Position numbers and translations under genes: made by a program. Of a DNA stretch of 64,000 nt, positions 4,743 through 30,232 are shown piece by piece. This DNA comes from Ramazzottius varieornatus (taxonomy: Eukaryota; Animalia; Tardigrada): positions 5,865,591-5,929,590 of the forward strand of contig BDGG01000001.1 in NCBI GenBank assembly GCA_001949185.1, given 5' to 3'. Below the pieces are notes generated by a model, which had not been told where the DNA came from, ran no database searches, and saw nothing but the letters and a program-made list of their open reading frames with translations. Each line of letters starts with the position of its first letter. The first letter of the stretch is position 1.

Positions 4743-5901
4743 TAAAGCGAACTACATCAAGAGTTTTTCCTTTTTTATTTAAGGCAAACTGCGAGCGAGC
4801 CGAAGTCAAAGCGAACAGCTTGTACCCACATGCCGCTATCCAACTAGATCAGAATTCCACCTTCACGTCTGGTGGTAAGTGGTGTAAAGGCAACGCATCC
4901 TTCCTGGTGAACGACTGGACCTCTTGCGGCCAGGGGTGGCTATGAGGACCGAAGTATCTGAGTGGGCGAGATCGGTGAGAGTAGGGGACCAGGATCCCAC
5001 AGGAGAACTCTTGTGGCTAATCCCATTCTTCGCCTGTCATCTTCTGCTTCAGGTTTGTTGGGACTGGGCGCTTTCTATAGCGGCAGCTGGTTACAGTCAT
5101 AATGGCCGAAGTGAGTAACCAGACAACCTTCAAGCATCAAATTCCTAGAGATTATACCCGTAAAGGAAAATTCAGCATTACGTAAGGGAAGATCAAAGGC
5201 GCCGAATGGACCCCCCCCCCGCACAGGCGCATCTGNNNNNNNNNNNNNNNNNNNNNNNNNNNNNNNNNNNNNNNNNNNNNNNNNNCATCAGCACACGCCA
5301 GATGCGACTTCTCGGTGACCACTTGACGGAGATGAGCTCACAAATGAGACGGCTCGTAGACAATCTTCTCTCCGGCTTCCCTGGAGATGATCATCGTCCT
5401 TCTGGCTATCACATCCATCTTCCGAAGTTCCGTGGGTAATGAGTATGGAGAGAATCTCGCGAGGAAAAGAAAGGAGAACGGAAATAACTTGGAAGCTGGG
5501 AGAATGAAATTCAAGTTTGGGATTCGAATTTCGAAACGTAATACGCCAATACGTCAATAAAATCAGCTAAAACAGAATTTGAAAATTCTGTGCAGCGATC
5601 TTAAGGAAAAAATAAGCGGTGGATAGCTGCACAGAACAAAACTTGTACGCATGCTGTGGTTATCGAATTCATTTTGTCGTACACTGCAAATGGCCATAAG
5701 TGTGCATGTAGGTGCGTGATAGGAATCAACTACACATGCAAGCACTAATTCTCGATCCGGTACAGCGCGCCAGCCAATAGCAATACGTTTGGCTCAAAGC
5801 CCGCACCGAAAAGTGCCATTCTTTTGCGGTCAAACTTAGCATTTTCCAACGCACCCTTTAAAAGCACCTCGCTTCGTTCGGCTTGACAAGCAGGTGCTCG
5901 C

Positions 5902-6644: not shown

Positions 6645-8913
6645 CACGCGGCTGGCCTAATTGTGGAGATGGACAAAATTATGAGGACGATATTCCCGAA
6701 ACAGCGGCTCCGCCAACTGTGTTCTCTTACGATTGAAACAGAACTGGCTTTCACCATACATGGCCGCTCTACATCTGATTTGATTAAAGCTTCTGATGCG
6801 ATCGAGCGGATCGACTGGAACCGGCAAACCTCGACAAAGCATCAAGATGAGCAGGAAATAGCGTAACTCAGTTCTCCAACTGCGACAACAGGCAGCTAAC
6901 GTTTTCCTGATATTTGAGGTAGAAAAAGGAACTAAACTTGTCCGACTACGGAACGATATCAGCTTTTGACCTTCTTCGATCTGCCTTTTTTCGAAGCGAC
7001 GGGTAAATCTGCTTTAGCAGACATCGATCTTGTCCTTTTATTAACGGCCACTGGCAGTTCGATCTGGACAGTCTTCGGTCTTCCACGCTTTTTCGGCACT
7101 TCACCTGCAGTTTCCGAAGCTTTGCTTTTTTTTGCATCCTTCAGAGCCTGTCGTGCCCAATTTCGTTCCTCCTGCTGCGACGAGAACGTTTCTGTCTCGG
7201 TGTCGAGAACGTTTCTGTCTCTCTCAAAAGCAAGTCTCTGATCCTTCGGTTTCTCCTGTTTTTTCCGGCTTCGAGAATGAGAAAGCTTCACCTGCTGGAG
7301 CTAATACGGTCTCCGCAACTGACATGTGACAGCCATAGATGCCTACGATGGATTCAATACTCGCATTAATTTTATCGTCATCCCCAGAAACTCTAGAACG
7401 AAGAATCTCGGCCACGTCCTTCATCGGCGAACTTTCCTTAGTCAGCACGGGCAATGCGGGTGCGTCTTGAGCTGCTAACTTCTTGTCGACAGTTGCACGA
7501 ATCGTCCCGGGTGAAAAAAGGAATATGCCATTATTCTTGAAGCCGCTCTTCAGTGGTGCTTCGAACTCGAAAGAGAATCTGGAAGCTTCTGGGGTGTAGA
7601 GCAATGCCAAGTGCCTAGCAAAGGTGTTGCGAGTCATCTGAAGAGTAACATAAATTTCCAGAAAGCAAAGTTAATTGATAAGAACTTCAGGCAATGCTCT
7701 TTACCTCGAACGAAGGATCAAGGCGTTTTGACGCTTTATAGTTAGTCCACTTTGACCTTCATAAATCCGAACGTGCAGTTATCCAACGGCTGCAATTTAT
7801 CCGTTTGTCCCGCAGGAAGACAGATGAGTTTGATGTCTTTCCCGGAGTCTCTGCATAGTTTGAAAAGCTGAGCGTTGTTGACATGACTGTAATGTCCATC
7901 GCAAAGAACGACGCACTACAAAATAGCAAACGCAGATCACAGTTAAAATCATAGCTCGCATCACAGTAACAAGCATCAGACACCTATCATCCACACATTT
8001 GATAGCGTAAAAAACGTGATACCTTCTGGGGCGCATTCGGCAAGATAACTTTCCGGAAGTAATCCGTTATGACATCGCAGTCCATAACCCCCGTACCGCT
8101 CACTGCGATGTACAATTTGCCATCGGTATTATCGAACATGCTTTTCAGGTGATAATGCCGTCGAACAGGACCAATGGCTTGTACATTTTTCCGGCTGCGT
8201 CTCCGCAAAACAAAGTGCTGACAGCGTAACGAGTAGTTCCGTCGGGGTAAGAAGGAACATGCTTCATACCTCTTGCGGCGTAGCCTTTCTCCTTCTCAAA
8301 ACCCAACATGAAGCCTGATTCATCGAAGTTTATTATAGCAGCAGGGTCCGAGAGGTATCCTTCGCTTTCAAGTTTAGCTAACAGGCTGATCCAGTCTTCG
8401 GCACATTCAGGAGTCCATCCCGCGCCTGCTTGGATCCCATACGAAGGGAAACCTGTTTCTCATGGTCACGCATGAACCGACGGTGCCACTTTTCACTAAA
8501 GACTGCACCGATACCTGAGAAGAAAGGAGCAATTAGTTTCACTGAACATTTTTCAGAAACGAAAATGTACTGTAATGCTTCTCGAACTTGGTGAATGACG
8601 TCACGGTTAGCGCAGAGTTTACGGGTACGATAACGCATACGGTACACGCTTACAATGACATCATTCGCCAAGTTAACTGACCTTACAGTACCTTTGCCGA
8701 AGCTTATTCCATCCACAACAGAACGGAGATCGTGTTTGTTCATCGGAAATCCGCTGTTTCCAAACCCGATCAACATGTCCACCAGTAAAGCCTCTTCTGT
8801 TGTATCCAGCTTCGTTTTTCGCCCAATCTTCTGAGCTGTGGGGGATTTCTCGTAGCGGACAATAGTCATCTGAGGAACGCGAAACGTTAGCGAAGCTTTA
8901 GGCCAGTCGCGTG
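6645..8913 (-). mobile_element. pogo-family (DDE_1) DNA transposon, defective copy A
   Basis: TA-flanked TIR cacgcggctggcctaa / ttaggccagtcgcgtg. Fragmented transposase ORFs (8378-8932, 7987-8208, 7224-7637, 6959-7291) are clearly homologous to copy B. It has frameshifts, and the 5' end is deleted down to the TIR. Confidence 0.88.
8570..8688. mobile_element. MITE nested in transposase intron 1 of pogo copy A
   Basis: ta|ctgtaa...ttacag|ta; internal inverted repeat aacttggtgaatgacgtca / tgacatcattcgccaagtt; similar to the 4600 MITE. Confidence 0.7.
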
Positions 8914-9717
8914 TACTACACATCAGAAACAAATGATTTGGTCATACAGGTAAAATGCGGGTCCCACATTAATTTTGAGTACTTGGCTGGTGACTGAACA
9001 AAGCATACGTTTCGTACTCCGATGCGCCAGCGGTGTTCTAAATCTACCCTTGAATTGACCGCATGTTACGGCGATCTGCTCTGGATAAGCAGAGCACGGT
9101 AACTAGAGGCAAAATGAGATAATGCGCGTGCTCGCCTAGCCTCGCTGATCCTCCTCAGTTCAGATTTTCCTCCTGCGCGGATACCATCGCCGTTCCTGTC
9201 GTTATCCACTCCACAACCGAGAACAGTTCCACTTAGAATTAAAATCGTTTTCCGTGCAAACATACACGAAAAATCAGTAAATGAGGTGAATCAAAGTCGA
9301 CTGAGGTCCACTAAACGTCCCCGAAGAATCAAGAAATCAATCAGAACTACTAGCAAGTAGCGGACGAGAATCAATTAAAGGTAAACAAACATCAATCAGT
9401 AAGACGAAATAAATTCCCGAATACTTCTCGAGACAAATCTCTGGTCGACTAGACATCCGTCCACCGGCTCGAGCATCCAGCTTGGCTCGTCTGTCGTCGA
9501 AGAATCTGAAACCAGACGACAGGAATATTTTCAACGTCAAGATATCAGGAGCATAGCAAAACCACCTGATCGAGGCAATGCGCCGATCGAAGTTATTCAC
9601 CTGCACTGGCCTGTAAACTCCAATCCTGCAACCGCCGCTTATTGGTGTTCTCCCGTCCTCTTTTGGCGAAGATCCCGAAAGGTGATCCGTAGGGTTCGTA
9701 CAAAAAGAAGAAATAAC

Positions 9718-11040: not shown

Positions 11041-12525
11041 CTTCGTAGCAAGCTGAGGCAAGCTGCATCCCTCGCAACTTCTGTTCGGAACAGCGACGGA
11101 TATCAAACCTATCGGACGGGGGATGAAAAACGTATCGATGGCTGGATAATTCTCCCGGATGAATTCCAATTCAAAATATGTTCCACTACGCCAGCGAGAA
11201 CGTTTTACGCCGGATACAGCGTTGTGGTTTGGATATGGAACTCCGATGGCATAATCACTGTAATCTGGGGTTAAACTCTTGGTGTAGTTTTGCACTTTAA
11301 TATGTGGCTCTCGAAATAATGGATAATTTCGCAGTTGCAAATATGGTTTCCCGGAGAGCCTAAAAGAGCACACAACGATAAATCCCGAAACGAGATATCC
11401 AGAGCGGTGTTATTTTACTATGCAACTAAAATTATCAAAAGTCGCGTGCTAATGTTAGATATTTTGTCATGTGTACAAAGGGTGGTGTTGTTGGAAAAAT
11501 TTTGCATACGTGTTTCAAAACGTATGTATGATTAGAGTACGGATTTTAGAAAGGGGGTTCTTGGTCCTAATTCTGACTTTGACGATTTTGGCCTCAGGTT
11601 GTAGAGAAAACTTAGTGTTGACGAATGCCACCAACTGTCACGAAATGACATGACTAGTTTTGGAGAAATCAATTGTGGAAGTTTTTCTCAACCCGGAAAA
11701 TTTAATTTTCCCCCATAATTAATAATATTTAGAAAATCGCCAAGCCCGAGTTGTGTACTCTGCCTCGTAGTGCGAGATTAATCGTTGCACGCGAAGGCGG
11801 CTAGAGGTCGCGGGGGGGGGGCAAGTCAAGAAAAAACTACCGTAGAATTCCTCCTGAAAGGTCCACAATCCTTAATTTTCAAAAAGCCCGCAATCACGGA
11901 ATTGCGTTGGACTCCGGCCGTCACTGGTCACACCTGATGTCGTGCGTAGATTTTGCACAGAGACCCGAGTAGATTTACTCCTGGAAATACCCCGCCGTTT
12001 CTTGCATCTTCATACTGAAGAGCAGCACCATGTGTTACTATCGCAAAAACTGAGCTTTTTGCACTTCTCAGGGCTGCTTCTGAGGAATTCTGCATTATCC
12101 CTCACTGTGGCAGCGGACTGCTCGTGAAGCTTGAAAAAAGTCTTTTGCTTAAGCAAACCATGCTTTCTCAGTTCTCGATGGCAAGGCTACCGCGACAAAA
12201 ACCGGATCGGTGTTAGTGGCTAACGCACAGAAGTCTCTCATCTCAATATTTTTACAAGGAACGGAAACCGACTAGGTCGGCTTTGTTAACAGGTCTTGTC
12301 GCTTCACATCGTTCACCGAAAATAGAGTATTTATCCGTTGATCCCCTAGCTAGCAGCAGGTCAGCTTCTCCATCATGAAAAAGTGAAACGCATGATTACC
12401 TGCACACGCTGAGAGACTGTTGTCTTTTATCCTACAATGGTGCGTCTGTCCTTAACATCGATTGTTTGTCATGGGAATTTTCCGTTTTAAACTAGTCTGA
12501 TTTAGCTGTGCTTTGCATACCAGAT

Positions 12526-13704
12526 ATGTATTCTGTGAACGCAGTCTCTTCTAGTACCGCTCGATTCAACAGAATCACGAAACGTCCCAACCATCAGGCA
12601 TTGTACTTTGTTCTGATTATCACTGTTTTGCTACCGACTTTTCAGGTGATGTTGTCTACAACCGTCACCGACAGGTACGAAGGTACCACAGCGACGGAAA
12701 AACCCAGAACAAAAGTGTTTTATTTGAAAATGTTTAGAGCTGCTAGTAGTACCATACAGAATGTATTCTTTCGTTACGGAGATGCCCGGAACCTTACGTT
12801 TGTTTTACCAAGAGAAGGACATATGCTTGGTTACCCTCGGCCATTTGAACCGTCATTTGCCCTTCCTTTGCCCTCAGCGTTTTCCCGTCAGTATGATATG
12901 TTTGTTAACCACGCTCGTTGGAACGAACGAAGTCTAAATATCCTTTTCCCAAACGGTGTCATCAGCATAACCTCCATACGAAATCCAGTCGGCATGATCC
13001 CGTCTCTATACGACTATTTCGGCATGCGGAGTCGATACAGCATACCCCTCAGCAAGTTCATGGAAAATCCCAGTCTGTACACGAGAAGGAAGAAGATGAA
13101 CTGGTTTACACGCAACCCAATGGCGGTAGAGTTCTCAATTCCGAGTAACGTCTGCGAGAACGGCACGCTGTTCACCCGGCGGCTGATGCAGATAAACGAT
13201 ACGTTTGCTCTGGTTATGCTAGCAGAACGTTTGGAGGAGTCAATGGTATTGTTGCGTGAAATATTCAGGTGGAGCTGGAATGATGTCGTTTTCTTTCGGA
13301 CCAATGAGCGATGCGACTGCAGTCCGAGAACGTTGGTGGATGAATCCCTGAGTAGAAGAATCCAAAAATGGAACGCTGTGGACCTCGCGCTGTACAAGTA
13401 TTTTGAGATGGAATTCGAACGAAAAAAGCGTGTTTACGGCCTTACTAAGTTCAGGACGGACGTGGATTTTCTCAAAAGACTAAACCATCAATGGTACAAG
13501 CATTGCGTTATCGGGACAGACATTGCCCCAAGATGTCGTTGCGGTTCAAACGGCACCATCTCTAGCAGTGATTCGGAAGCTCTTCTTTACAGCCGAACTG
13601 TAAGGAAAGATGATTTAAACTGCCAGAAGCTTGGCCTACACGAGATGCATTACACGCAAATCCTCAGAAAAAAATTATGGCCCAACTTGACACGAACTGA
13701 ATAA
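12526..13704 (+). CDS. Galactose-3-O-sulfotransferase-like type II membrane protein
   Basis: Single ORF with an N-terminal TM (ALYFVLIITVLL). Family motifs: VFYLKMFRAASSTIQNVFFRYG..LTFVLP, NHARWN, ITSIRNP..SLYDYF, FALVMLAERLEESMVLL, WNAVDLALYKYF. First in-frame ATG is at 12526. Confidence 0.88.
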   Translation: MYSVNAVSSSTARFNRITKRPNHQALYFVLIITVLLPTFQVMLSTTVTDRYEGTTATEKPRTKVFYLKMFRAASSTIQNVFFRYGDARNLTFVLPREGHMLGYPRPFEPSFALPLPSAFSRQYDMFVNHARWNERSLNILFPNGVISITSIRNPVGMIPSLYDYFGMRSRYSIPLSKFMENPSLYTRRKKMNWFTRNPMAVEFSIPSNVCENGTLFTRRLMQINDTFALVMLAERLEESMVLLREIFRWSWNDVVFFRTNERCDCSPRTLVDESLSRRIQKWNAVDLALYKYFEMEFERKKRVYGLTKFRTDVDFLKRLNHQWYKHCVIGTDIAPRCRCGSNGTISSSDSEALLYSRTVRKDDLNCQKLGLHEMHYTQILRKKLWPNLTRTE

Positions 13705-14158: not shown

Positions 14159-15737
14159 GTCAAGAGTCACGCCTGTAGCCGTCATACTTGTTACCTTGTT
14201 GGCCTCCAACAATTACAAGGTAACAGGGTTTCCGCATCTGACTGACACCAGGGCTAGACGGTCAGCGATGCGGAATAATTTTTGTGGCATGGCATGTGCT
14301 TACACCATCATTTTACGCTTCAAAAAGTTTTTAGTCTCACCAGAAGTGGTTCCAGCAATCCTTTCTCGTTGGAAAAGAGGTCTCTAGCACCCTCTAACAA
14401 GTTCAGCAGTCACCAACAAGTTAAAAAGAAATTTTTAAACCTTCACCGGGGCCCGTCGGCCTGTCAAACTTGTTAGCGGAGCCTGTGAGAACTGCTGGAA
14501 AACTCCTTTGCGATCAGATTCCTCGGACTTGCTACCGAAACATTCCGTCTTACCACTGTAGTCTTACGAAGCCGTTTTACTTTTAAAAGCGTGGGAAACC
14601 GTGCAAGCGCGTTAACCGGCCTTACCCATTTTCCTACAGTACAATTGGAATTGTCGCTGATCTTCGTACCGCGATGCATCACAGCGCAACAAACTTCCGG
14701 TTGGGAAAACAGCTGATTATAGCATATTTCTGTCAAAACTGTATCTATGAAGAGCGAGAAAAGCTCTGAGGCTGATTGCTGTTCCCTTCAATTTTCCTAG
14801 GATGAGGTAAAATGCAGTCAACGCTATCCGTCCGGTTTCAAATTTTGACTGTACGTTGTATCCGCAGTACTGCACTGGCAGTGTGATAATCTAGTGATCA
14901 CTAACTAATCACCGCTTGAAACCGGACGAATGGCGTTGCCCGCATTATATGCGCATCAAGGTGAAGATTTACGTAAAAATTTCATGGTGCGGTAACAAGT
15001 TTGGAGGTGTCGGCAATAAGTTTGAATGGTCCGGTTCCGGTATCCAGTTGCGGCTTATCGATAACAAGTTGGAGGTAACCCGTAACAGCTTAGTGGAGGC
15101 GGTAATGAAAACTCCAACCTCCAACAAGGCAACAAGTATGCTGGCTGCAGACGCCACTAGTTTTCAAGACTACTGCTACTCGAGTCGAAAGGGTTGATCA
15201 ACCTAGTATGAATTTCCAGAATGTTTATACTATTCCGCACAAAACAGCCCATCGGCCTCCCATTGTGTCTCGCGGATTTAGTCATTCCTTATGCTGGCAT
15301 CCGTAAATGTGTGATTGCAAAAATCTGAATTTTTTACAAGTGTAAGCATATATACTGAATAACCTCGTGAGGACGCGTGGTAGAATACGTCTTGCGGACT
15401 CGGAACGTTTGGTATCGAAATGTTATGACACTGTATCTTCAGTATAACGAAAAAAGACAAGATTAGCTTGCTCACGCACTTCAATTGCTGCACCTCGATG
15501 CGGGTACGCCAAATTCTGAGGTAATTGTGACAAAAGCTCGTCCAGAGTTAGTTAGCAGATTGTATCGACCAAACATTGCAGAAAGAATGTACGCTCTACA
15601 CTGCCAAGCGTCCTCACCCACGACTTAGAATGGAGGTGAATTACTGTACGTAGATATTTCCTGTAATGCATAAATGCTGGATGGTAAGGCTTTTACTGAG
15701 GGCGACCAGATGAAAAGCACGGACTGATTTCAGCGGA

Positions 15738-17824
15738 TTAAGTACACTGGAAAACGGATGTCCCAGAAGCTCCGTTTCTTTGAAATGGATCACCCATTTC
15801 CCAGTGTCTTTTAGCGGTTCGATACCAGTCAACTGTTTGATCCAGGCCAGTGTCGAAATCTACTTTGGAGGTCCACCCCAGAGCGCGAATTTTCGAGGAG
15901 TCGACCGAGTAACGGCAGTCGTTATGTGGTCTGTCGGTCACGTACTCGATATACTGTGCAGGGTCGTCACTTCCATGAACCTTGGTGACGAGGAGTCGGC
16001 ACAATTGTATGATTTGAATTTCGTCATCCGTGCCGATGTTATAGACCTCTCCAATCACTCCTTTCTCTACAACGGTCTGTAGAGCTGTACAGTAATCTTC
16101 GACGTGCAGAAACCTTCTTGACATCAGACCAGCCCCATGCACTGGTAACTTCTGATCGCTCAACAGGCAAGTGACAAATTTCGGGATTACCTGAGTTGGA
16201 AACTGGTATTTCCCATAGACGTTGTTGGCCCTAGTGATGACATAGGGCAAACCGAACGACTTTCCGTACGACATTAGCAAACATTCAGCACCTGCTTTCG
16301 TGGCGGCGTATGGGTTGGTCGGGAAAAACGGAGTATTATGCTCCGCACAGCTACCCGTTGGCACTTCACCATAAACTTCGTCAGTGGAAATGTGGACGAA
16401 GAGCTGGAAATTCTCGCGGTAAATCTTTATGGTTTCCAACAGGTTGAACATTCCGATAATGTTGTTTTCGATGTAGGTCAACGGATGACCAAAAGACGGG
16501 TCCACAGTACTGGCGGCTGCGAAGTGGATGACATGGGTGATGTGATTTTGTTCGAAGGTCCGCCTTAGTTCCCGTTCATCCAGGAGATCGGCGTGAATAA
16601 ACTTGTAGTTTGGGTCTTGTGGGTTTTCAATATTACGTAGGTTGGAGTTGGTCAGTAGCGCGTCAAAATTGATCACGATGTCTTTTCGATGGCCAGTCAG
16701 CCAGTAGTTGATGAAACTACTACCTATAAAACCAGCGCCTCCGGTTACCAACAGGACCCTTTCAGGGTTATTCGCAGAGCTAAAAAACGAGATGCGTTAG
16801 TGGCGTGGAATAAGGAGTTAAACAAATGTGGAATGTGAGTCGCTGTAATGCAGGACAGGCTACATATCGCATACCGGTTTTGTGCAGGTGGCGGATACAT
16901 CATGTCAATGACCGGATTTCTGAAGCGCAAAGCGAGAATTTCCATGATTCGCTCGTTGATAGGTTTTAATACAGCAGGAACAGAATATCGATTTTTCGTT
17001 TCTTGAATCAATTCGTTCATCATAACAATGGCCTTGTCCGCAGTCAATAAGTTGTTTGAGCGCTTCGCGACGACAAGGTCAGACTGCTCAGATGGAGGAA
17101 CAAGTATGTAGTTTAGCTTTGTCTTCGCTGAACTTTCGTATTGCTTAAGAACAGTATCATGATCGATGGACCCAGGATTGACCGCATTGATCGTTCCTGT
17201 CTTCATGTGAACCAACAGAGCGATAAGAAACGGGATCCAGTCCGACAAAATTGTCATTGAGTTCTTGACGGATATGATTTTCTTGTAACCTACAATCTTT
17301 GTGATGAAGTCTCGAGGGTTGGACTGTACCGAGATAGGCATTCGAACACGAGCGTTCAGCACGTGAGGAAACCCTTTCATCAGTAGATCGGTCTGACCTT
17401 TTACAATGGAATACGACGATCCAAAGAAGTTTGCATTCTCGTCCTCCCGAAACCCGTGTCCTCCAACAGTATGGGTAGCATCGTACTCGAAGATGCAGCC
17501 GGAGCCAATATATAGCAGGGGAATACTCCTTCCATGCAGGCCGGAAGTAGCGAGTGCGACCAGAACTGGAGCAGTCAAATTTGATCCCACATTATCGGTC
17601 AGTTTTCCTGGCTGCTCCAGGTAGTCAACAGTATTGTTGAGGGGACCAGAAGTGCGTCCAAGTGCACAGACCACTCTATCCGGATTCCATTTTTCCACAT
17701 CTGCAATGACGTCCTGGACAAATCTAACCCTTCCGCCGGGGTACGCTTTGTCTCCGGCGGATTTCACAGCTTCGCAGAACTGCTGACCGATCCACCCCGA
17801 ATGACCGTAAATCAAAAACTTCAT
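15738..17824 (-). CDS. Fused NDP-L-rhamnose synthase: N-terminal 3,5-epimerase/4-reductase (NRS/ER-like) plus C-terminal NDP-glucose 4,6-dehydratase; exons 17824-16875 and 16779-15738 (663 aa)
   Basis: Domain 1: MKFLIYGHSGWIG, NFFGSSYSIVK, RVRMPIS, NPRDFITKI, NSMTIL. Domain 2: LVTGGAGFIGS, HFAA, HISTDEVYG, PTNPYAATKA, ITRANNVYG, DRPHND. A 95-nt intron at 16874-16780 (GTATGC...CTAAC...TTTTTTAG) joins the two ORFs in frame (QN-R-SANNPERVLLVTGG). Confidence 0.9.
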
Positions 17825-18996
17825 TATCAGCACCTAAACACACTTTTCAACGGCAAACCCACATCAAGTCAACTACCAGACGGTTGCAGAACCCAGAGCT
17901 TTTGGAAGCATGAGACAGTCTGCCTGGTGGCAAGATTCACAGTGTGAGCATCCGTCCTTAAGTGGCAGGAACCGTCTGTACTGTTTTCCGTCGAGCAACT
18001 GATCAGTTCAGTGAAGCAACTGATTCATGAACACTAGGACCTGTACATGTAGTCCAGTCTGTACGGCTAGTTCCGGTGAACTCACTGTGAAGAACGTGGC
18101 TACCACGGTTGAGCAAGCCGCTCTTGAATTTTTTGTGTACTGGTCGCCGAACTAGAGCACATACGATCAAAGTACGCTCAGAGCTTGGACAATGAACCTT
18201 ACCAGCCCCCTCGGTGTCGGAGGTCAAATAGTTCACTGTCGCGCTGCCGGTACGGCTTGCGCAATTTCATTCCATCCAAAAGTCAATTAGGTGTTGTGAG
18301 ACAAAGTGACTCAGGTGCAACCACAGTCATGGCTGAGAACATTTGCAACCATCAGCTTCCAGGCGCGTTTCTTGTCCTGTGAAAGCATACGTTAATACGG
18401 CAACAATGCGTTCTGCTGAGCTGCATACAAAAAGTATTTATTGGTAGACTGGGTCGAGACGAGTTTCTTCCGGACCAATCACATCTTCAACATCAAATTC
18501 AACTCCCTTTCATGAGTACCGTTGATTCACGAAATGCTCGCCACTAAACAGAAAAGACCGACCGCTTATCAGGCTTTGACCAGCACCGGGTGGTTCTGTT
18601 TCTTTTTAAACCATACATTACAGTTGATGACACGTTGATGACGCGAAGACCTCAGGGACTTCGTCCGAAAATGTTTTCTGTAAGGATGGTGAATAGTTCA
18701 ACCTGTTGAGAGCGCATTTTCACTGCACCATTAGCAATTCGTTCTATTAAGCCCAAGTTTTAGATCGATTTACCTCTCTGTCCATATGACATGGTACAGA
18801 GAAAATCAGTTAAACAGATACATCTCGATACAGTTCATCAGAGCATACGATCCCGAAGGCCATACACACAATAGGGTAGTGGCATCAAGCAGTGTACTGC
18901 AGCACGACGGGCTCCATGGCCTTTCATGGGCAACTGCTGATCGATGGTACGCAACAGCTGCGTTTGCTTTCGGGCCGTCTAAGTCCGACAATCACA

Positions 18997-19983
18997 ATGA
19001 ACCGACGGCCTCTCCACTTTTTACAGCTGCTAGCGCTGTTGATTATAGCTGCCATGGTTATTCAGCGGGAATGGATCTCTGATGTTCAAGTGTGGCTCCG
19101 TAAAACCACTGGCACACGAAACGATTTGTCTCCACTTATCCCAATCATGAAATCCTTTCGCGACCTGGCGGACCAATTCACAATTCTGCCAACAGAGTTT
19201 TGTGGCTCTTCAGTTTTCATGATTATCGGCGTCATATCTAATCCATCAAACTTTGATGCGCGCAGCGCAATCCGGTCCACTTGGGGTTCCTTCGCACTTA
19301 CTTCATCGTGTGTCAAGTTAATATTCGTCTTGGGAAAAGTTCGAAATGGTACTCTCCAAGAAAAAGTGGGAAAAGAGTCAGCTCTGCATGGCGATATTTT
19401 ACAGTCTAACCAGTTTTACGACGCTTATCGGGCTTCCCAGATAAAAACAACATATCTGCTACGATGGTGTGCTAAATTCTGTGCGAACAGCAGTTTTACT
19501 GTACGGGTTGACGATGACGTGTGGGTAAACTTACCGAAGTTTTACAAGTACATGAAAACTCGTTCAGCGTTCAGCAGCCGGGATGCATATGGATTCAAAC
19601 TTTCGGGAAGCAACATGACGATCGTTCGACAACCGGAAAGCAAATACTATGTACCTCGGGAAGACTTCAGTCCAGATTACTATCGGGATTTTTTGGCAGG
19701 AAATCTGATCGCATTCCCCACAAGTTCACTGCTTAGTTTATTGTCTGTGTCTGTCGCAAACCCTTCGGCCATGTTTCTCGATGACATTTATTTCACTGGT
19801 CAACTTTCGATGCATGTAAACATGTCGTTGACGAATATCCCGGGATTTTTTCCAAGATTTACTCAAATGGTGGGACGCACTTGCTCTAAAAAGACCATGT
19901 TGTGGATGCACTACACTTCACCTAACGATATGTACATCTTGAGAAGTAATCGCTGTTGGACATCTAACACCACATTTTGTTGA
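18997..19983 (+). CDS. Beta-1,3-galactosyltransferase family (GT31), intronless
   Basis: TM segment LQLLALLIIAAMVI; motifs RSAIRSTWG, IFVLG, ESALHGDILQ, FYDAY...KT, RVDDDVWVN, SKYYVP, LDDIYFTG. Confidence 0.9.
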   Translation: MNRRPLHFLQLLALLIIAAMVIQREWISDVQVWLRKTTGTRNDLSPLIPIMKSFRDLADQFTILPTEFCGSSVFMIIGVISNPSNFDARSAIRSTWGSFALTSSCVKLIFVLGKVRNGTLQEKVGKESALHGDILQSNQFYDAYRASQIKTTYLLRWCAKFCANSSFTVRVDDDVWVNLPKFYKYMKTRSAFSSRDAYGFKLSGSNMTIVRQPESKYYVPREDFSPDYYRDFLAGNLIAFPTSSLLSLLSVSVANPSAMFLDDIYFTGQLSMHVNMSLTNIPGFFPRFTQMVGRTCSKKTMLWMHYTSPNDMYILRSNRCWTSNTTFC

Positions 19984-22713: not shown

Positions 22714-25100
22714 CACGTGGCTGGTCTAATGATTGGCATGGACAAAAGCATTGGCAAGTCATTTCCGAGACAGCGGCTCCGCCGGCTGTATTCGCTTACA
22801 GTTGAAACAAACTGGCTTTCACCATACGTTGCCCCTTTACATCCCGCTCGGATAACCGAATCTTTCACAGAGAACTTCCCAATCATTTTAAAACCCAATC
22901 TTTCCGTACACTTGGCTTTCCATTTATTTGAGGTAGGAAAACACTATCATTCAGTGAGCTCAAGGCTACGTCACAATCTCAGTTTTTGGCCTTCTTCGAC
23001 GTGCCTTTCTTTGGAGCGACGGGTAAATCTGCTTTAGCAGACTGAGATCGCGTTCTTTTCTTGACGGCCACTGGCAAGTCGATTTGGGCAGTCTTAGGTC
23101 TCCCGCGTTTCTTAAGCACTTCATCGGTTGTTTCCGAAGGTTTGGCTTTCTTTGACACCTTTAAAGCTAGCCGTGCGCGATTTCGTTCCTCGACTGCCTC
23201 CACGTACTCGCTATCAAGAACGTTTCGGCCTTTGTCGAGAGCGAGTCTTTGATCCTTCGGTTTTCTTTGTTTCTTTGGTTTGGAGAATGAGAAAGCCTTA
23301 CTTGCTGCGGCTACTACCGTCTCCGTAGCTGTCTTATGGCCGGCGTAGATGCTCACGATGGACTCGATGCTTGCATGGATCTTGTCATCGTCCCTGCCAA
23401 CCCTCGAGCGAAGAATATCGGCCACGTCTTTCATTGGCGAGCTCTCTTCAGTCAGTATTGGTGATACAGGTGCATCTTGGGCCACTAACCTCTTAACCAC
23501 AGTTCCACGAATCGTTTCAGGTGAGAAGGGGAATATTCCGGTATTCCTGAAGCCGCTCTTCAGGGACACTTCAAAATCGAATGAAAATGCTGAAGCTTGT
23601 GGTGTGCAAAGCAAAGCCAGGTGCCTAGCAAAAGTGTTGCGAGTCATCTAGAAGCAAAAGGGGTTTTATAAAAGCATGCTCCGGACAGAACTTCAGCGAA
23701 TGTAACTTGCCTCGAAAGATCAAGACGTCTGGAAGCCTTGTAGTTCTTCCACTTCTCTTTCATGCATCCAAACGCACAGTTGTCCAACGGCTGTAACTTA
23801 TCCGTTTGTCCCGCAGGTAAACAAATAAGCTTGATATCCTTCCCGGAGTCCCTGCATAACTTGAACAGCTGAGCATTGTTGACGTGGCTGTAATGTCCAT
23901 CGAAACGAACGATGCACTACGAAAAAATAAAGGCTTAGTCCATTGCCCGTGAAGTACCCTGGATCAGAAAGAGACATTTCACGCACTATCAAGTAACAGA
24001 TTTTGTTCATACAAAGAGCACAATACCTTCTGTGGCGCGTTCGGCAAAATAACTTTGCGGAAGTATTCTGTCATGATTTCGGGATCCATGACTGCGATGT
24101 ACAGTTTGCCTTCGGTGTTATCAAACATGCTTTGCAGATGCATAACTCCATCGAAAAGGACCAAGGGCCTGTACATCTTTCCGGTAGCATCACCGCAAAA
24201 CAAAGTACTGACTGCGTCCCGCGTAGTTCCGTCGGTGTACGAAGGGAAATGTTTCATTCCTCTTGCTGCGTAAACTTTCTCCTTTTCAAAACCCAGGATA
24301 AAACCCGACTCGTCCAGGTTTATTACAGCCGACGGATCCGAGAGGTATCCTTCGCTCTCAAGGCAACTCAACAGGTTAATCCAATTTTGAGCACATTCGA
24401 CAGTCCATTCCCGTGCCTTCTTGCGATCCACATTAGATCCCATGCGAAGAGAAATCTGCTTCCCATGGTCACGCAGGAAACGACGATGCCACTTCTCGCT
24501 GAAGACCGTACCCATGCCTGCCAAAAAAACACAGAACTGATGTTACTTAATTTTTTTCAAAAACAAAAACATACCTTTTCCAAAGCCCATCTCATCGACG
24601 AAAGTACGCAGATTATGCTTATTCATGGGGAATCCATTGTTCCCAAAGCCAATCAACATGTCCACCAGTCGAGCCTCCTCTGTCGGGTCCAGCTTTGTCT
24701 TTCGGCCAAGCTGCTGAGCTATGGGGGATTTCTTGTAGTTGATGATCGTTCCTCGCGGCACACAAAACGTAAGCGAAGCTTTCCGAACTGGCATCCCGTT
24801 CGCCACTGCGCGAACTGCATCTTGCAGACATTCCTCGGTGTACTTCCGGCGTCTCTTGATCTTGAAACCTTCCGACATGTTTCAAGGTTAGGTTATTCAA
24901 GAATCGAGATCGGGAAACCAACTTATGAAGAAATACAAAATTTGAAATGACATTGTACAATGAAAAGCGCATTGCTAAATTTTCACTTCCTGACGTCACA
25001 AGGCTACTTTCTGTCCCGATATAACATTCTTTGCGTTAAACTGCCGCCAGTCCGTGCTGCCAATGCTTTTGTCCATGCCAATCATTAGGCCAGCCACGTG
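22714..25100 (-). mobile_element. pogo-family (DDE_1) DNA transposon, near full-length copy B
   Basis: 43-bp TIRs (22714-22756 / 25058-25100, 1 mismatch) and TA TSD. The spliced transposase has an HTH_psq-like N-terminus (YTEECLQDAVRAVANGMPVRKAS..VPRGTI), a CENP-B-type HTH and catalytic motifs NLDESG, FDGHYSH and LQPLD. Confidence 0.93.
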
Positions 25101-26191: not shown

Positions 26192-27558
26192 TCAGTCCAA
26201 TCCTGTCCAATGAGGGAGGAAGTAATCATTTTCTCTGTAGTTTCGAGCTATCGCCGAGTGCGGTCTCGCCCAGTGATTGTAATAGACGACGTCCAGAGCA
26301 TCACCCTGATAGGCACCCCACCATCCAAGTGATCCCACAGACAGGATAAGGTGATCTGCAAGCATCAGCATTGCTAGCGTAACAACTGGATCCATGCTCT
26401 CCACGAACACGATATTGGCCACACCCTCGAAAGCTGTTCGGCACCAGGAAACATCATCACTGACAGCGAAAAGCATGGCGCCAGGATACATAGCACTCAT
26501 TCGAGCAATTGCACGCAAAAAATATCGTTTGTTCGTGGCAGAATAACCAGGCGATGCGAGACCCGGCTCAAGAGCCATCTTGCGGAAGACAGATATACCG
26601 ATGAGCACATCAACATCTTTCTTCGCTTCCAAACCAGCGAACAGTTTCTTGGCGGCTTGATCGTAGATGTCCTCTTTGAGTACAAACTGATAGTCGAGGA
26701 GAGGTTTATATTTGTGAAAGTACTTCCACGATTGAAAGGACCCTCGAAGAACCGATACTTTGGCGTGTTGCTTTGCTGTGCTGGCTACTGGACTGCGAAT
26801 GTCCATCCGACGACGGAGAGACTTGTCGAAAACACCCGGGGTGGAAACGATAAACACAGTTCTGTTAAGCAATCCTTGCCGGAAGCTTTGGCTATCTTGC
26901 TTTGACAGTAGCTGTGGTGAGTAAAACTCGTGCATGAAATTTTCCGAGTGCAAAATCGTTCCCGTGAAGACAGCTGGAAAATAGATAGATGTACGCTTAC
27001 GAATAACTGCTCACGCGATGTATTTGGTACCCCTTGGTTGCTCACCTTTTCGGGCACTGGCCTCCGCCATGCCGATAGTCGCAGCGGCAATAAAAAGGAA
27101 ATCACCTAGGTCCGCATTTGATGGTATCTCGCCGGTTACGAAGAAGGTGTCTAAATATTGTGTTTCTTCTTGAGCTCGTCCTGGCAGGGACAGCATCCAG
27201 TCCGACAAAACTGGTCGTGGTAGTGAAAGACGGCATTGCACACGTGCTCTTATACGCTGGGTCACGTCATACGCTACCGGGAGGTGTTTCCCACATGCTC
27301 GATACGCGGGTGCTCCTCGGCGCGTCTCTGCAAGTAACAGTTATGATACGGACGGGTTAGGTAAAATAACTACTCATGGCACCACTTCACGATGGTTTAT
27401 GTTTATGTACCCAGAACGGGCTCACCAGTGAACAGAGATCCTGTGAACTCGATCAAGGTAACAGAGGAGGACGACGACAAAATAAACAACAGAACGGCTG
27501 CGGTTGTAAACCCAACGGCGGTCAACCAGTATGTCGATGATGCTGATTTCCTATACAT
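26192..27558 (-). CDS. Alpha-1,2-fucosyltransferase-like (GT11); exons 27558-27411, 27327-27046, 26973-26192 (403 aa)
   Basis: N-terminal TM; ADLGDFLFIAAATIGMA (GRLGNQMF-like), LRGSFQSWKYF, YFLRAI, FAVSDDVSWC, DHLILSVGSLGWWGAY, DYFLPHW. Both GT-AG introns are phase 1 and keep the frame open. Confidence 0.85.
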
Positions 27559-27801: not shown

Positions 27802-29509
27802 TTAATCGAAATTGCATGAAAATGTTATTTCCCGGCTTTCCTTAATTGAGAGAGGAGATCCGTAGAGGATGAATCGGTAAATCTGACCCAGGAAGGTCGG
27901 ATTACTACGCATGGCCGTAAAACTCAGATTTAAAGCATCGGTTATTGTCATTACCCCAACTTCAACATCTCCTTGCAAAGGAAAAAGTCGTGCTTTATCC
28001 TGCAGCTCCTTTTGGGATAAATGCAACGTCTTCGGACTGAGGGCGTCTTCTAACCGTGAACTTGTAGGTTTCCTAATGTAGTACATGTCGGAAGTCATTA
28101 TTAAGCCTTGCATATTGTCTCGCTGCACCGCAGTGCTGGTCTCCGATGATTGCCTACAGAGGTAAAGCTGCGTTCCGGCGAATGACTGTGACAGGTGAAC
28201 GATCAAAGGTCCGGTCAATTCCGTGGTCGAGGGAGCATGGACGACTAGACGCTTCGGTGCAAGGTTCTTCAGAATCGAACGAAGTGAAATATATTCCGCG
28301 TTCGTGAGATCGTTGGGTTCGAACTGCGTTCTTTGTCGTTGCAGAATGTATTGCACCGACAGTCCGTCGACGGGCGGTTGAAATTGGCAGGAACTTGCAA
28401 GCTGGAGTATTGGTAGGCCAGGATTCACAATATCTCGAAACATCTGTGCAAACGATGAGTCTCTATTGAACAGCTCCGAATACGACAGTTCATGGGTCTC
28501 ATCTGGAACCAAAAGTCTGGTGTTCATCGTTTGTTCGATAGAATAGGCTTACAGTTCGCAGAGCAGAAGCATATGGTTTGCACTTACAGTCGTCGTCGTT
28601 ATGGACGTAGAAATGCCGCTTCCAGTTGTTCACATGCGCATGACGGAACTTGGCCCCTTCGTCTCCATAGTAGGTGTACATTCCTTTGTCGGCAAAGTGG
28701 ATAGTCTTCCGGTACGTTGCGTTCGCCCCGTATAGCCTCATGGGAAACACACAAGCGTTATACATGGCAGCGATTGGGTTCTTTCCACAGTAACCTCTAA
28801 AGTTGACTTCGTATTCATGCAGCCATTCTCTGACGAAGTCGGTGTTGGGCCGGCAAGCGAATCCTCCACTGCTGATGAAGGTTTGACCCTTCCAGAAGGT
28901 TTTCCCGAAGATACAGTCATAACGTTTTAGCCACTGTACAAGCTGAGACCGCTGACCAACAAAGTAGATATCGAAGTCAGCAAGGAACCCACCGTAATCT
29001 TTCGCTGCTTTCAGCTTGAATAGGTCCGCTTCCTGTTCTATCGTGATGAGCCTCCTGCCATTAGCCCAAAGAATTCGTTTGATCGGTATGACTTTGATGT
29101 GATTTTTCACGGCGTTCCAATAAGGCCCGGCGAACTCAGCATTCGTGTGTAGATAAATTGTTACCGGATGAAGGCGTTTCACAGCGGACACAATCGAAGC
29201 GTACTGGAGTACCTTGAGGTCGTAAGGAACTGCGCTTACCCGGTTCTCTAGCCACACGTAATGTACCAAGATATCTTCAGGTCTCTCAGACTCTTCCCGT
29301 ACCCATTGTTTAGCGCTCCTCACGCGAACTAAATAGCACACGATGCAGCCCACAGCCAAGACTACCACGAGACTGGGTCTGTATTTTAACAAAGAACAGG
29401 CCAGCCTATGGCGTCGACCACGCAGGAGCAATTGGTGTTTCCTGTGGTCTCCGCGTCCTGTGCGGGAATTTCTACTTTCGGGGAATACAGTCATTGTCTC
29501 GCTGGGCAT
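27802..29509 (-). CDS. GT32-like (alpha-1,4-glycosyltransferase, DXD) with ~200-aa C-terminal extension; exons 29509-28588 and 28502-27802
   Basis: TM segment LVVVLAVGCIVCYLV; motifs ILVHYVW, ASIVSA, EADLFKL...YGGFLADFDIY, FVREWLHEY. An 85-nt intron (GTAAGT...TTCCAG, 28587-28503) joins in frame to ETHELS..SSFAQMFRDIV. The 3' end could include further splicing. Confidence 0.8.
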
Positions 29510-29571: not shown

Positions 29572-30232
29572 GCTCTGTTTCATCTACCGATGGGTGGTAC
29601 TTTCAGCCTCCTGGCCAACCCATCCGAAATTTTTTATGGATTCTTTTAAGGCCATAGTTCTTAGTTCGCGAAGCGGGTCAACTTGGCCGTTTTAGAAAGT
29701 TAAGATCAGTTCTTGATCATCCCGCTACGGGGGAAGATCTACTGATAGGATCTCTGATCCTCAGTATGTACGATCCTCCACACAGTCGTACGCGTGAATC
29801 CGTCCCGGGTAGTGAGCACGCGGCAGACCGGCCAATCAACGGTCAGCTGTCAATCAGTCCAGCATGAATGTGCAGTATCACACACGGTGAGCCCAGCGTG
29901 CCGTTGATCACCTGTTTATGTACTCAAGGCGCAAATCTGTNNNNNNNNNNNNNNNNNNNNNNNNNNNNNNNNNNNNNNNNNNNNNNNNNNCCTACCCGGG
30001 ACGGATTCACACGTACGACTGTGTGGACGATCGTACATACTGAGGTTCAGAGATCCTATCAGTAGATCTTCTCCCGTAGCGGGATGATCAAGAACTGATC
30101 TTAACTTTCTAAAACGGCCAAGTTGACCCGCTTTGCGAACTAAGTACTATGGCCGTAAAAGGATCCATAAAAAATTGTGGATGGGTTGGCCAGGAGGCTA
30201 AAAGCACCACCCATCGGTAGATGAAACAGAGC
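29572..30232. mobile_element. Long-TIR foldback element spanning an N gap
   Basis: Arms of ~240 bp (29572-29812 and 29991-30232) are near-identical reverse complements with scattered mismatches. Confidence 0.65.

What the first reader, a model, noticed from the sequence alone, without database searches (positions are those of the whole stretch)
15738..17824. Animal NDP-L-rhamnose synthase fused in reverse domain order, with an intron at the junction
Seen: the ORF track shows two overlapping ORFs that look like a bacterial operon. A 95-nt intron with donor, CTAAC branch point and poly-T acceptor joins them in frame into one 663-aa protein, epimerase/reductase first and 4,6-dehydratase second. 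Both Rossmann and YxxxK motifs are intact. Known: plant RHM enzymes have the dehydratase N-terminal and NRS/ER C-terminal; fungi and giant viruses generally encode the two separately; most animals make no rhamnose, and nematodes use separate Rml-type enzymes. Inference: an independent fusion, possibly of a horizontally acquired gene pair. From memory, the TVDYLEQPGKL insert looks more like giant-virus/protist reductases than plant ones; this is unverified.
Basis: partly seen in the sequence, partly recalled or inferred. Interest (0 to 1): 0.88.

Follow-up and report, generated by a model that had tools for sequence, protein, structure and literature searches.

The report
Reversed-order rhamnose synthase gene in tardigrade
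This tardigrade has an expressed two-exon gene that joins the two enzyme domains needed to make UDP-rhamnose, in the opposite order to plants; the same layout is common in giant viruses and also occurs in bdelloid rotifers, so it was probably acquired ready-fused, not invented here.

Summary
On the minus strand, exon 1 (17824-16875) and exon 2 (16779-15741) are joined across a 95-nt GT..AG intron. Assembled contigs from four runs of four studies skip exactly 16780-16874, and single 2.4-2.6 kb contigs span both halves. The 663-aa product equals the NCBI entry 'hypothetical protein RvY_02097' of Ramazzottius varieornatus.

The N-terminal half is an NRS/ER-type 3,5-epimerase/4-reductase; its best solved relative is Mimivirus L780. 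The C-terminal half is an NDP-glucose 4,6-dehydratase. All catalytic residues are kept, and a His sits at the position linked to UDP-glucose preference.

The 'independent fusion' reading is not supported. The same epimerase-then-dehydratase order occurs in:
- Paramacrobiotus, another tardigrade;
- five or more bdelloid rotifer species;
- dozens of giant-virus contigs;
- more than a hundred metagenome proteins.

The tardigrade, rotifer and 18 unidentified metagenome proteins form a well-supported clade apart from all identified giant-virus copies. The linker is homologous across that clade, and the intron lies in a disordered, Ramazzottius-specific linker insert.

Horizontal acquisition of an already fused gene is the best reading, but the donor is unknown. 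None of the papers found by the searches describes this architecture or rhamnose synthesis in tardigrades or rotifers. Enzyme activity is untested.

The parts
15354..18059 (-). Extent of the mature transcript as seen in assembled RNA contigs (5' UTR about 235 nt, 3' UTR about 384 nt)
   Evidence: table 8: the X1 contig of 2611 nt lies on 18059-16875 and 16779-15354. X3 and X8 contigs are similar.
16875..17824 (-). Coding exon 1: ATG at 17824, 316 codons plus two bases of codon 317
   Evidence: 100% identity to P0325 residues 1-316.
16919..17824 (-). NRS/ER-type (UGER) 3,5-epimerase/4-reductase domain, residues 1-302. Holds Rossmann GHSGWIG, Cys110 (17497-17495), Tyr138, Lys142 and Lys176.
   Evidence: 7JID (Mimivirus L780) E = 1.6e-61; 4QQR (Arabidopsis NRS/ER) E = 1.8e-46. 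L780 catalytic residues are Cys108 and Lys175; these columns are invariant. TM-score 0.93 to 7JID.
16780..16874 (-). Phase-2 intron of 95 nt, GT..AG, with a CTAAC branch-point-like site and a T-run
   Evidence: sequence. table 5 (joint 16779/16875 in contigs of four runs).
16767..16918 (-). Interdomain linker, residues 303-321, interrupted by the intron. Predicted disordered. Holds a 13-residue insert absent from Paramacrobiotus.
   Evidence: pLDDT below 50 for residues 304-321. (alignment columns 370-400).
15741..16779 (-). Coding exon 2: last base of codon 317 plus 346 codons. The stop codon is at 15740-15738.
   Evidence: 100% identity to P0325 residues 318-663.
15792..16766 (-). NDP-glucose 4,6-dehydratase domain, residues 322-646. 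Holds GGAGFIG, Thr449-Asp450-Glu451, Tyr474, Lys478 and His531 (16139-16137) at the nucleotide-preference position.
   Evidence: PF16363, 229.8 bits. TIGR01181, 327.6 bits; 6BI4 E = 6.3e-76; 6VLO (Mimivirus R141) E = 6.1e-70; role of the His/Gln/Tyr position. TM-score 0.90 to 6VLO.

Best explanation
RvY_02097 is a single, spliced, expressed gene of the tardigrade Ramazzottius varieornatus. It encodes a two-domain enzyme predicted to convert UDP-glucose to UDP-L-rhamnose.

Inferred mechanism: the C-terminal domain, with tightly bound NAD+, dehydrates UDP-glucose to UDP-4-keto-6-deoxyglucose. The N-terminal domain epimerises C3 and C5 (Cys110/Lys176) and reduces C4 with NADPH (Tyr138/Lys142). 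A flexible linker of about 20 residues tethers the two folded domains.

The gene belongs to a large epimerase-then-dehydratase fusion family. This family is abundant in giant viruses and metagenomes and occurs among animals only, so far, in tardigrades and bdelloid rotifers. Most likely an ancestor of parachelan tardigrades acquired the gene horizontally, already fused. It then adapted to the host: host-like GC content, paralogues, and an intron gained inside the linker.

Shown here: gene structure, splicing, transcription, domain identities, residue conservation, distribution. Inferred: the catalytic activities, the substrate, the horizontal origin and the order of events.
For: Splicing and a single mRNA:
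- Shown: - The product is identical to the annotated 663-aa protein.

Domain identities:
-.
- Fold matches to Mimivirus R141 and L780.
- The model has two confident domains and a disordered linker.

Residues:
- All catalytic residues are in invariant columns, with roles taken from PMC9614988.
- His531 aligns with RmlB Tyr224, R141 Gln206 and TvUGD His214. Every fusion in alignment A1 has His or Gln there, which PMC9741107 links to UDP-glucose preference.

Selection:
- 11 synonymous against 5 non-synonymous differences in a divergent strain's contig.

Distribution:
- the best full-length relatives are Paramacrobiotus (52%, 51%), then bdelloid rotifers (45-47%), then metagenome proteins. No other animal is among the best 120.
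- giant-virus contigs hold 33 fused loci and 14 loci with adjacent separate genes.
- tardigrades, rotifers and 18 metagenome fusions form a clade with 100% SH-aLRT support. The ER domain of this clade is cut off from plant/algal, trypanosome, prokaryote and identified viral ERs.
- The linker helix is conserved across this clade.

Host integration:
- GC 0.47-0.48 against 0.467 for the window.
- Animal-type Golgi enzyme genes flank the gene.
- The contig is 9.3 Mb.
- A degraded ER copy lies about 31 kb away.

No alternative route to rhamnose in this genome:
- No other 4,6-dehydratase and no RmlC were found.
Against: - No enzyme assay and no rhamnose measurement exist for this animal.
- The dehydratase domain sits on a long branch. 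It differs at several nearly invariant positions: AAQTHVD reads AAASTVD, GTH reads GMF, HGDG reads HGAG. Its score is below the NCBIfam equivalog cut-off (327.6 against 365.1).
- The metagenome members of its clade could not be assigned to any organism. They have no close kin in IMG/VR or in GTDB genomes, so no donor is identified.
- An AU test does not reject a single tardigrade+rotifer clade (p = 0.185). One old animal origin therefore remains possible.
- Intron positions in Paramacrobiotus and rotifers could not be read.
Confidence: 0.68

Rival explanations
1. A horizontally acquired pair of adjacent genes (ER then DH) was fused independently in the tardigrade lineage. The former intergenic spacer became the intron at the junction.
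For: - Giant-virus contigs do carry ER and DH as adjacent separate ORFs in this order (14 loci).
- The intron sits exactly between the domains, inside a Ramazzottius-specific 13-residue insert.
- Unspliced, the first ORF would end 46 codons after the exon-1/intron boundary.
Against: - Paramacrobiotus, bdelloid and 18 metagenome proteins of the same clade are already fused. They align collinearly through a conserved linker helix.
- The closest relatives called by prokaryote-style gene finders are single uninterrupted proteins of about 620 aa.
- A fusion specific to Ramazzottius would require the fused state to have arisen several times within one clade.
Confidence: 0.08
2. Vertical inheritance. 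The fused gene is an old eukaryotic or early-animal gene, kept in tardigrades and bdelloid rotifers and lost in nearly all other animals.
For: - The AU test does not reject tardigrades and rotifers as one clade (p = 0.185).
- Their clade is separate from all identified viral sequences.
- The unidentified clade members could be eukaryotes.
Against: - Only two animal groups appear among the best 120 of 5.8 billion clustered proteins.
- In the free trees, rotifers group with metagenome sequences to the exclusion of tardigrades (96% SH-aLRT).
- The unidentified members are intronless proteins on contigs of up to 173-235 kb.
Confidence: 0.12
3. The protein is not a complete rhamnose synthase. Either the fast-evolving dehydratase domain is weakened or repurposed, or the pair makes another 6-deoxyhexose nucleotide.
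For: - Long dehydratase branch (end branch 0.97 against 0.35 for ER).
- Substitutions at nearly invariant positions.
- Score below the TIGR01181 cut-off.
Against: - The catalytic Thr-Asp-Glu and Tyr-x3-Lys and all 23-sequence invariant columns are kept.
- Mostly synonymous variation in both halves.
- The fold matches dehydratases at TM-scores 0.90-0.94.
- The ER half keeps the Cys/Lys pair shown by mutagenesis to be needed in L780.
Confidence: 0.1
4. Contaminant or assembly artefact: a viral or microbial sequence wrongly placed in the tardigrade assembly.
For: The nearest identified non-animal relatives are viral.
Against: - A spliceosomal intron is removed in RNA contigs of four studies.
- The gene lies within a 9.3-Mb contig between animal-type glycosylation genes.
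- GC content is host-like.
- Orthologues exist in a second tardigrade genus.
Confidence: 0.01

Closest known systems
Mimivirus L780 (UGER, PDB 7JID) plus R141 (UGD, PDB 6VLO): the two-protein UDP-L-rhamnose pathway of giant viruses
   Same: - Same two domain types.
- L780 is the best solved match to the N-terminal half (E = 1.6e-61). It shares the DYLEQxGKL insert and the Cys/Lys and Tyr/Lys residues.
- R141 is among the best matches to the C-terminal half (E = 6.1e-70; TM-score 0.90).
   Different: - In Mimivirus they are two separate proteins from distant genes. Here they are one polypeptide.
- R141 has Gln and the tardigrade has His at the nucleotide-preference position.
- The tardigrade ER domain is not in the same clade as the identified viral ERs.
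Plant RHM1-3 (trifunctional UDP-rhamnose synthase) and NRS/ER
   Same: One polypeptide carrying dehydratase and epimerase/reductase. Same predicted overall reaction from UDP-glucose.
   Different: - The domain order is reversed (plants: dehydratase N-terminal).
- The plant/algal ER lacks the 5-residue insert and falls in another clade with chlamydial and Dependentiae ERs.
- The fusion event is therefore a different one.
Uncharacterised ER-then-DH fusion proteins of giant-virus metagenome genomes (IMG/VR GVMAGs) and of bdelloid rotifers (annotated 'dTDP-D-glucose 4,6-dehydratase')
   Same: Same order, length (about 600-660 aa) and collinear alignment at 37-47% identity. The rotifer proteins share the longer linker with its helix.
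   Different: - The viral copies form a separate clade with a shorter linker.
- The tardigrade gene has a spliceosomal intron and a longer linker.
- None of these proteins has been characterised.
Caenorhabditis elegans RML-1 to RML-5 (dTDP-rhamnose pathway)
   Same: The only rhamnose pathway so far described in an animal (as cited in PMC9741107).
   Different: - Bacterial-type: separate dehydratase, RmlC epimerase and reductase, with a dTDP substrate.
- The tardigrade genome shows no RmlC and no second dehydratase.

Membership tests
NRS/ER (UGER) 3,5-epimerase/4-reductase | Significant sequence similarity to characterised members over the whole domain | tested here: met
   L780 E = 1.6e-61 over residues 1-265; AtNRS/ER E = 1.8e-46. 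Pfam and NCBIfam have no model that detects it.
NRS/ER (UGER) 3,5-epimerase/4-reductase | Catalytic Cys and Lys for epimerisation (L780 Cys108/Lys175) and Tyr-x3-Lys for reduction; GxxGxxG | tested here: met
   Cys110, Lys176, Tyr138, Lys142 and G7/G10/G13.
NRS/ER (UGER) 3,5-epimerase/4-reductase | Fold of L780 / NRS-ER | tested here: met
   7JID_B, TM-score 0.93 (normalised by target), rmsd 2.1 Å.
NRS/ER (UGER) 3,5-epimerase/4-reductase | NADPH-dependent conversion of UDP-4-keto-6-deoxyglucose to UDP-L-rhamnose | not testable with these tools
   Needs an enzyme assay.
NDP-glucose 4,6-dehydratase (RmlB/UGD) | Family profile match | tested here: inconclusive
   PF16363 scores 229.8 bits (cut-off 27). 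The bacterial equivalog model TIGR01181 scores 327.6 bits, below its cut-off of 365.1.
NDP-glucose 4,6-dehydratase (RmlB/UGD) | Catalytic Thr-Asp-Glu and Tyr-x3-Lys; GxxGxxG | tested here: met
   T449-D450-E451, Y474, K478 and GGAGFIG.
NDP-glucose 4,6-dehydratase (RmlB/UGD) | UDP- versus dTDP-sugar preference residue (Tyr in dTDP enzymes; His or Gln in UDP-preferring ones) | tested here: met
   His531 aligns with RmlB Tyr224 and R141 Gln206. The interpretation comes from PMC9741107. It predicts a preference for UDP-glucose.
Plant-type RHM | Dehydratase N-terminal, epimerase/reductase C-terminal | tested here: not met
   The order is reversed.
Plant-type RHM | ER domain within the plant/green-algal clade | tested here: not met
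   the RHM-like fusion P0223 (organism unnamed; plant-like only by my guess) and Cymbomonas P0303 lie on the far side of a branch with 100% SH-aLRT support.
ER-then-DH fusion family (giant viruses, metagenomes, bdelloids, tardigrades) | Single polypeptide, ER first, collinear full-length homology | tested here: met
   96-100% coverage; 33 viral single ORFs.
Bacterial/nematode Rml pathway | Separate RmlC (cupin) epimerase present in the genome | tested here: not met
   PF00908 gives no match in the tardigrade's own genome. The control search matched in 11 of 14 genomes.

The most novel reading that the evidence does not exclude
Tardigrades and bdelloid rotifers, two desiccation-tolerant micro-animal groups, make UDP-L-rhamnose. 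They would do so with a virus/protist-type, reversed-order fused synthase taken up from the giant-virus/protist gene pool, and build rhamnose-containing glycans (cuticle, eggshell or secreted matrix). That would be a second, independent origin of rhamnose biosynthesis in animals. It would also define a previously unrecognised, very widespread enzyme architecture.
Probability: 0.5. Interest if true: 0.7.

Novelty: new variant of a known kind. Interest (0 to 1): 0.6.

Why it matters
Rhamnose is regarded as absent from animals apart from nematodes, which use a bacterial-type pathway. A functional UDP-rhamnose synthase in tardigrades and bdelloid rotifers would add a rare sugar to animal glycobiology. 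It would also point to unknown rhamnosyltransferases and rhamnosylated structures in two groups studied for extreme stress tolerance.

Reviews up to 2025 that I could read describe fusion only in plants, with dehydratase first. The reversed fusion found here is common in giant-virus genomes and appears undescribed, so the family as a whole is an easy target for biochemical characterisation. The case is also a clean example of a foreign gene domesticated in an animal: intron gain, paralogues, a pseudogene and purifying selection.

Tried and rejected
I could not read the contigs of the unidentified metagenome relatives, or the gene structures of Paramacrobiotus and the rotifers.
- The single metagenome-contig scan chose dehydratase-generic patterns. 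It returned only ordinary stand-alone dehydratases and gave nothing for the question.
- Scans of IMG/VR with the clade's metagenome proteins P0283, P0280 and P0313 found no close kin. P0291 and P0125 found only giant-virus fusions at 41-48% identity, which fall in the other clade.
- The GTDB scan for this ER type found 16 MAGs, mostly Chlamydiae and Dependentiae, all stand-alone. The one apparent bacterial fusion (L250) is identical to a giant-virus MAG contig, so it is a binning error.
- The protein-atlas look-up only showed that the feature-nearest clusters are Nucleocytoviricota. That is a lead, not a placement.
- The dehydratase-only tree places tardigrades basally on a long branch. I treat this as probable long-branch attraction, not as a conflict.
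- Contamination was rejected (see rival explanations).
- Literature searches for rhamnose with tardigrade or bdelloid, for RvY_02097, and for the dehydratase with HGT and rotifer found nothing relevant.
- Joined model: it was never typed or sent to any search. Exons were searched by reference, and the identical database protein P0325, returned by a search, was used for full-length work. One script joined the exons internally, only to number codons for the synonymous/non-synonymous count.
Two loci returned from gut-metagenome records (L152, L157) were not used.
Full report
**What is there**

The minus strand of 15738-17833 holds two ORFs that overlap by seven bases. Read as a eukaryotic gene, exon 1 runs from the ATG at 17824 to 16875. 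A 95-nt intron follows at 16874-16780, with a GTATGC donor, a CTAAC 19 nt before the acceptor, and a T-run before AG. Exon 2 runs from 16779 to the stop at 15740-15738. The intron is phase 2: CG from exon 1 and C from exon 2 make Arg317.

**Is it spliced and expressed?**

Logan contigs of four runs from four different studies all carry the joint 16779/16875, with CT..AC on the plus strand. These assemblies total 12-27 Mb for a 56-Mb genome, so they are transcriptome-sized. Three of them are single contigs of 2422-2611 nt that cover 15354-18059 with the intron removed. The genome has only one locus, and it contains the intron. The spliced form is therefore RNA, and both halves lie on one mRNA. 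No contig retained the intron.

One run (X8) comes from a diverged strain. Of its 16 listed differences inside the coding sequence, 11 are synonymous and 5 are not. Roughly the reverse ratio is expected without constraint, and both domains show the same pattern.

**Whose genome?**

Earlier notes of this scan named the tardigrade Ramazzottius varieornatus. I confirmed this independently. The two exon translations are 100% identical to residues 1-316 and 318-663 of database protein P0325, which NCBI lists as 'hypothetical protein RvY_02097 [Ramazzottius varieornatus]', 663 aa, on a 9.3-Mb contig. The gene model is thus already public, but unnamed.

**What the two halves are**

Exon 2 matches GDP_Man_Dehyd/Epimerase (PF16363, 229.8 bits) and the dTDP-glucose 4,6-dehydratase model TIGR01181. 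The TIGR01181 score is 327.6 bits, below that bacterial model's cut-off of 365.1. Its best solved relatives are Bacillus RfbB (E = 6.3e-76) and Mimivirus R141 (E = 6.1e-70).

Exon 1 matches no Pfam or NCBIfam model. It does match the solved UDP-L-rhamnose synthase L780 of Mimivirus (7JID, E = 1.6e-61) and Arabidopsis NRS/ER (4QQR, E = 1.8e-46). Arabidopsis is five residues shorter there, so that recollection was right.

An AlphaFold2 model built on 23 homologues has mean pLDDT 85.9. It shows two confident Rossmann-type domains, with a disordered linker (residues 304-321) and a disordered tail (647-663). Foldseek places the domains on R141/RmlB (TM-scores 0.90-0.94) and on L780 (TM-score 0.93).

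**Active sites**

- In the epimerase/reductase half, Cys110 and Lys176 correspond to L780 Cys108 and Lys175, the residues confirmed by mutagenesis (PMC9614988).
- Tyr138-x3-Lys142 and the GxxGxxG motif are present.
- In the dehydratase half, Thr449-Asp450-Glu451 and Tyr474-x3-Lys478 are present.
- All of these sit in columns that are invariant across 23 fusion proteins.
- The residue that stacks on the nucleotide is His531 here. It is Tyr224 in Salmonella RmlB, Gln206 in R141 and His214 in the Trichomonas enzyme.
- PMC9741107 links His or Gln at this position with a preference for UDP-glucose. Every fusion in alignment A1 has His or Gln.

On this basis I infer the reaction UDP-glucose to UDP-4-keto-6-deoxyglucose to UDP-L-rhamnose. 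This is inference from homology; nothing has been assayed.

One caution applies. The Ramazzottius dehydratase domain has evolved fast, with an end branch of 0.97 against 0.35 for the other domain. It also differs at a few nearly invariant positions.

**Is the reversed order unique?**

No.

- A search of 1.84 billion representative proteins with exon 1 alone returned many proteins of 600-680 aa with this domain at the N-terminus. Pfam showed a dehydratase domain behind it.
- With the metagenome fusion P0122, and then P0325 itself, as queries, full-length collinear relatives include two Paramacrobiotus metropolitanus proteins (52% and 51% identity).
- They also include proteins of the bdelloid rotifers Adineta steineri, A. 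ricciae, Rotaria socialis, R. magnacalcarata, Rotaria sp. and Didymodactylos carnosus (45-47%), and more than a hundred metagenome proteins.
- No other animal, and no Hypsibius, is among the best 120.
- In IMG/VR, giant-virus genome bins carry the pair as one ORF in 33 loci (584-666 aa, three of about 910 aa). In 14 loci the two are adjacent separate ORFs in the same order.
- Among 396 retrieved proteins I counted 124 ER-DH, 34 DH-ER and 11 DH-ER-ER architectures.
- GTDB prokaryotes hold this ER type in only 16 MAGs, mostly Chlamydiae and Dependentiae, and always stand-alone. The single apparent bacterial fusion is identical to a giant-virus bin contig.

**Phylogeny**

In a whole-protein tree (57 rows, LG+C20 PMSF), tardigrades, rotifers and 18 unidentified metagenome fusions form one clade. 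All 20 identified giant-virus fusions lie on the other side, and the split has 100% SH-aLRT support.

The ER-domain tree (90 rows) recovers the same clade. It now includes a stand-alone Paramacrobiotus ER paralogue (P0121) and two metagenome fragments (P0123 at 72% identity and P0001 at 51-53%) that look like further tardigrades. A branch with 100% support and length 0.54 cuts this clade off from viral, plant/algal, trypanosome and prokaryote ERs.

In the remainder of that tree, both domain orders are interleaved. GV L242-244 and L052 group with the DH-ER proteins P0333, P0354 and P0163 at 100% in both domain trees. Fusion and re-ordering have therefore happened repeatedly in the viral/protist pool.

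The dehydratase tree puts the long tardigrade branch at the base with weak support (86%). I read this as long-branch attraction.

Rotifers group with metagenome sequences to the exclusion of tardigrades (96%). However, an AU test does not reject one tardigrade+rotifer clade (p = 0.185).

**Origin of the fusion and of the intron**

Within the animal-containing clade the linker is homologous: a helix of the form '(K/R)Y-x-(V/I)P...L..I..RI..I' runs straight into the dehydratase Rossmann strand. The viral clade has a shorter linker.

Ramazzottius carries 13 extra residues in the linker compared with Paramacrobiotus. The intron sits inside this insert, in the segment that the model predicts to be disordered. 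The simplest reading is that the gene arrived already fused and the intron was gained later in a tolerant linker.

That would need the fused state to have arisen separately in Ramazzottius, although all of its nearest relatives are fused.

**Horizontal or vertical?**

In favour of horizontal acquisition:
- The distribution in animals is extremely patchy.
- The family is dominated by viral and metagenome sequences.
- The unidentified clade members are intronless, on contigs of up to 173-235 kb.
- Rotifers and tardigrades are not sisters in the free trees.

In favour of long residence in tardigrades:
- About 52% identity between two parachelan superfamilies.
- Host-like GC content.
- Paralogues in Paramacrobiotus.
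- A degraded ER copy with in-frame stops about 31 kb from the gene.
- Flanking animal-type genes: a Gal-3-O-sulfotransferase, a GT31 galactosyltransferase and a GT11 fucosyltransferase-like gene.

The donor cannot be named. The clade's metagenome members have no close kin in IMG/VR or GTDB.

**Pathway context**

The genome shows no other NDP-glucose 4,6-dehydratase and no RmlC. It has only an RmlD-like multi-exon gene on another contig, which I guess is MAT2B-like. A nematode-type route is therefore absent, and this gene would be the sole source of NDP-rhamnose.

**Literature**

The papers I could search describe separate UGD and UGER in fungi, protists and giant viruses, and fusion only in plants with the dehydratase first. 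Searches combining rhamnose with tardigrade or bdelloid, and the locus tag itself, found nothing relevant. The library is limited to open-access papers, so this is not proof of novelty.

**Verdict**

It is wrong on uniqueness and on independent fusion.

The gene is a new variant of a known kind of enzyme. It belongs to a large, apparently undescribed fusion family. The biological implication, rhamnose synthesis in tardigrades and bdelloid rotifers, is worth testing.

Noticed in passing
G000:C1:5850305-5850967 (+), about 15 kb before the window's start; locus L247, about 1160-1840: Degraded copy of the ER domain: 45-48% amino-acid identity to residues 11-81 and 193-301 of RvY_02097, with in-frame TGA/TAG stops and frame changes. 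It still shows the linker-helix motif. It looks like a pseudogene relic of a duplicated copy.
   Followed up: partly
window 12508-13704 (+), 18892-19983 (+), 26192-26953 (-), 28499-29509 (-): The gene sits among single-exon-looking ORFs for a Gal-3-O-sulfotransferase (PF06990), a GT31 galactosyltransferase (PF01762), a GT11 fucosyltransferase-like protein (PF01531) and a 336-aa ORF with no Pfam match. Whether any of them uses UDP-rhamnose is unknown.
   Followed up: partly
window 8378-8932 (-) and 23979-24878 (-): Two ORF sets share near-identical peptide stretches, such as 'LVDMLIGFGN.GFPMNKH' and 'FSEKWHRRF.RDH.KQ.SLRMGS'. They are probably two copies of a DNA-transposon-like element. Pfam gave no match for the one piece tested.
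   Followed up: no
loci L011, L035, L037 (IMG/VR); proteins P0344, P0399, P0427: Some giant-virus and metagenome ER-DH fusions are about 910-940 aa long. They carry an extra C-terminal part annotated with 2OG-Fe(II) oxygenase-type Pfam families (PF13640, PF13661).
   Followed up: no
loci L242-L244, L052 versus proteins P0333, P0354, P0163: ER-then-DH and DH-then-ER proteins fall in one tight clade in both domain trees (100% SH-aLRT support in each). Domain order has therefore been swapped or re-fused recently within one lineage.
   Followed up: partly
locus L250 (GTDB 'MAG: bacterium isolate WB9_2_064') versus L073 (IMG/VR GVMAG-M-3300022752-26): The only 'bacterial' ER-DH fusion in GTDB is identical in both domains to a giant-virus bin contig. 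It is probably a binning error. 'MAG: Rickettsiales bacterium' P0331 also sits among giant-virus sequences.
   Followed up: partly
proteins P0292-P0300, P0303 (Cymbomonas), P0317 (MMETSP), P0336: Green-algal-type proteins of about 965-1000 aa carry dehydratase plus two tandem ER domains (DH-ER-ER).
   Followed up: no
loci L249-L263: Among prokaryotes, the NRS/ER-type epimerase/reductase with the DYLEQxGKL-type insert is confined mainly to amoeba-associated lineages (Parachlamydiaceae, Dependentiae/Vermiphilus). Single Marinicaulis and Asgard MAGs also carry it. In the ER tree, three of them (L251, L254, L255) and the Asgard MAG (L260) group with the plant/algal ER at 100% support.
   Followed up: partly
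window 5236-5285, 29941-29990, 46331-47128: Runs of N (assembly gaps). The apparent GC dip at 46-48 kb in the composition profile is caused by the third gap.
   Followed up: yes
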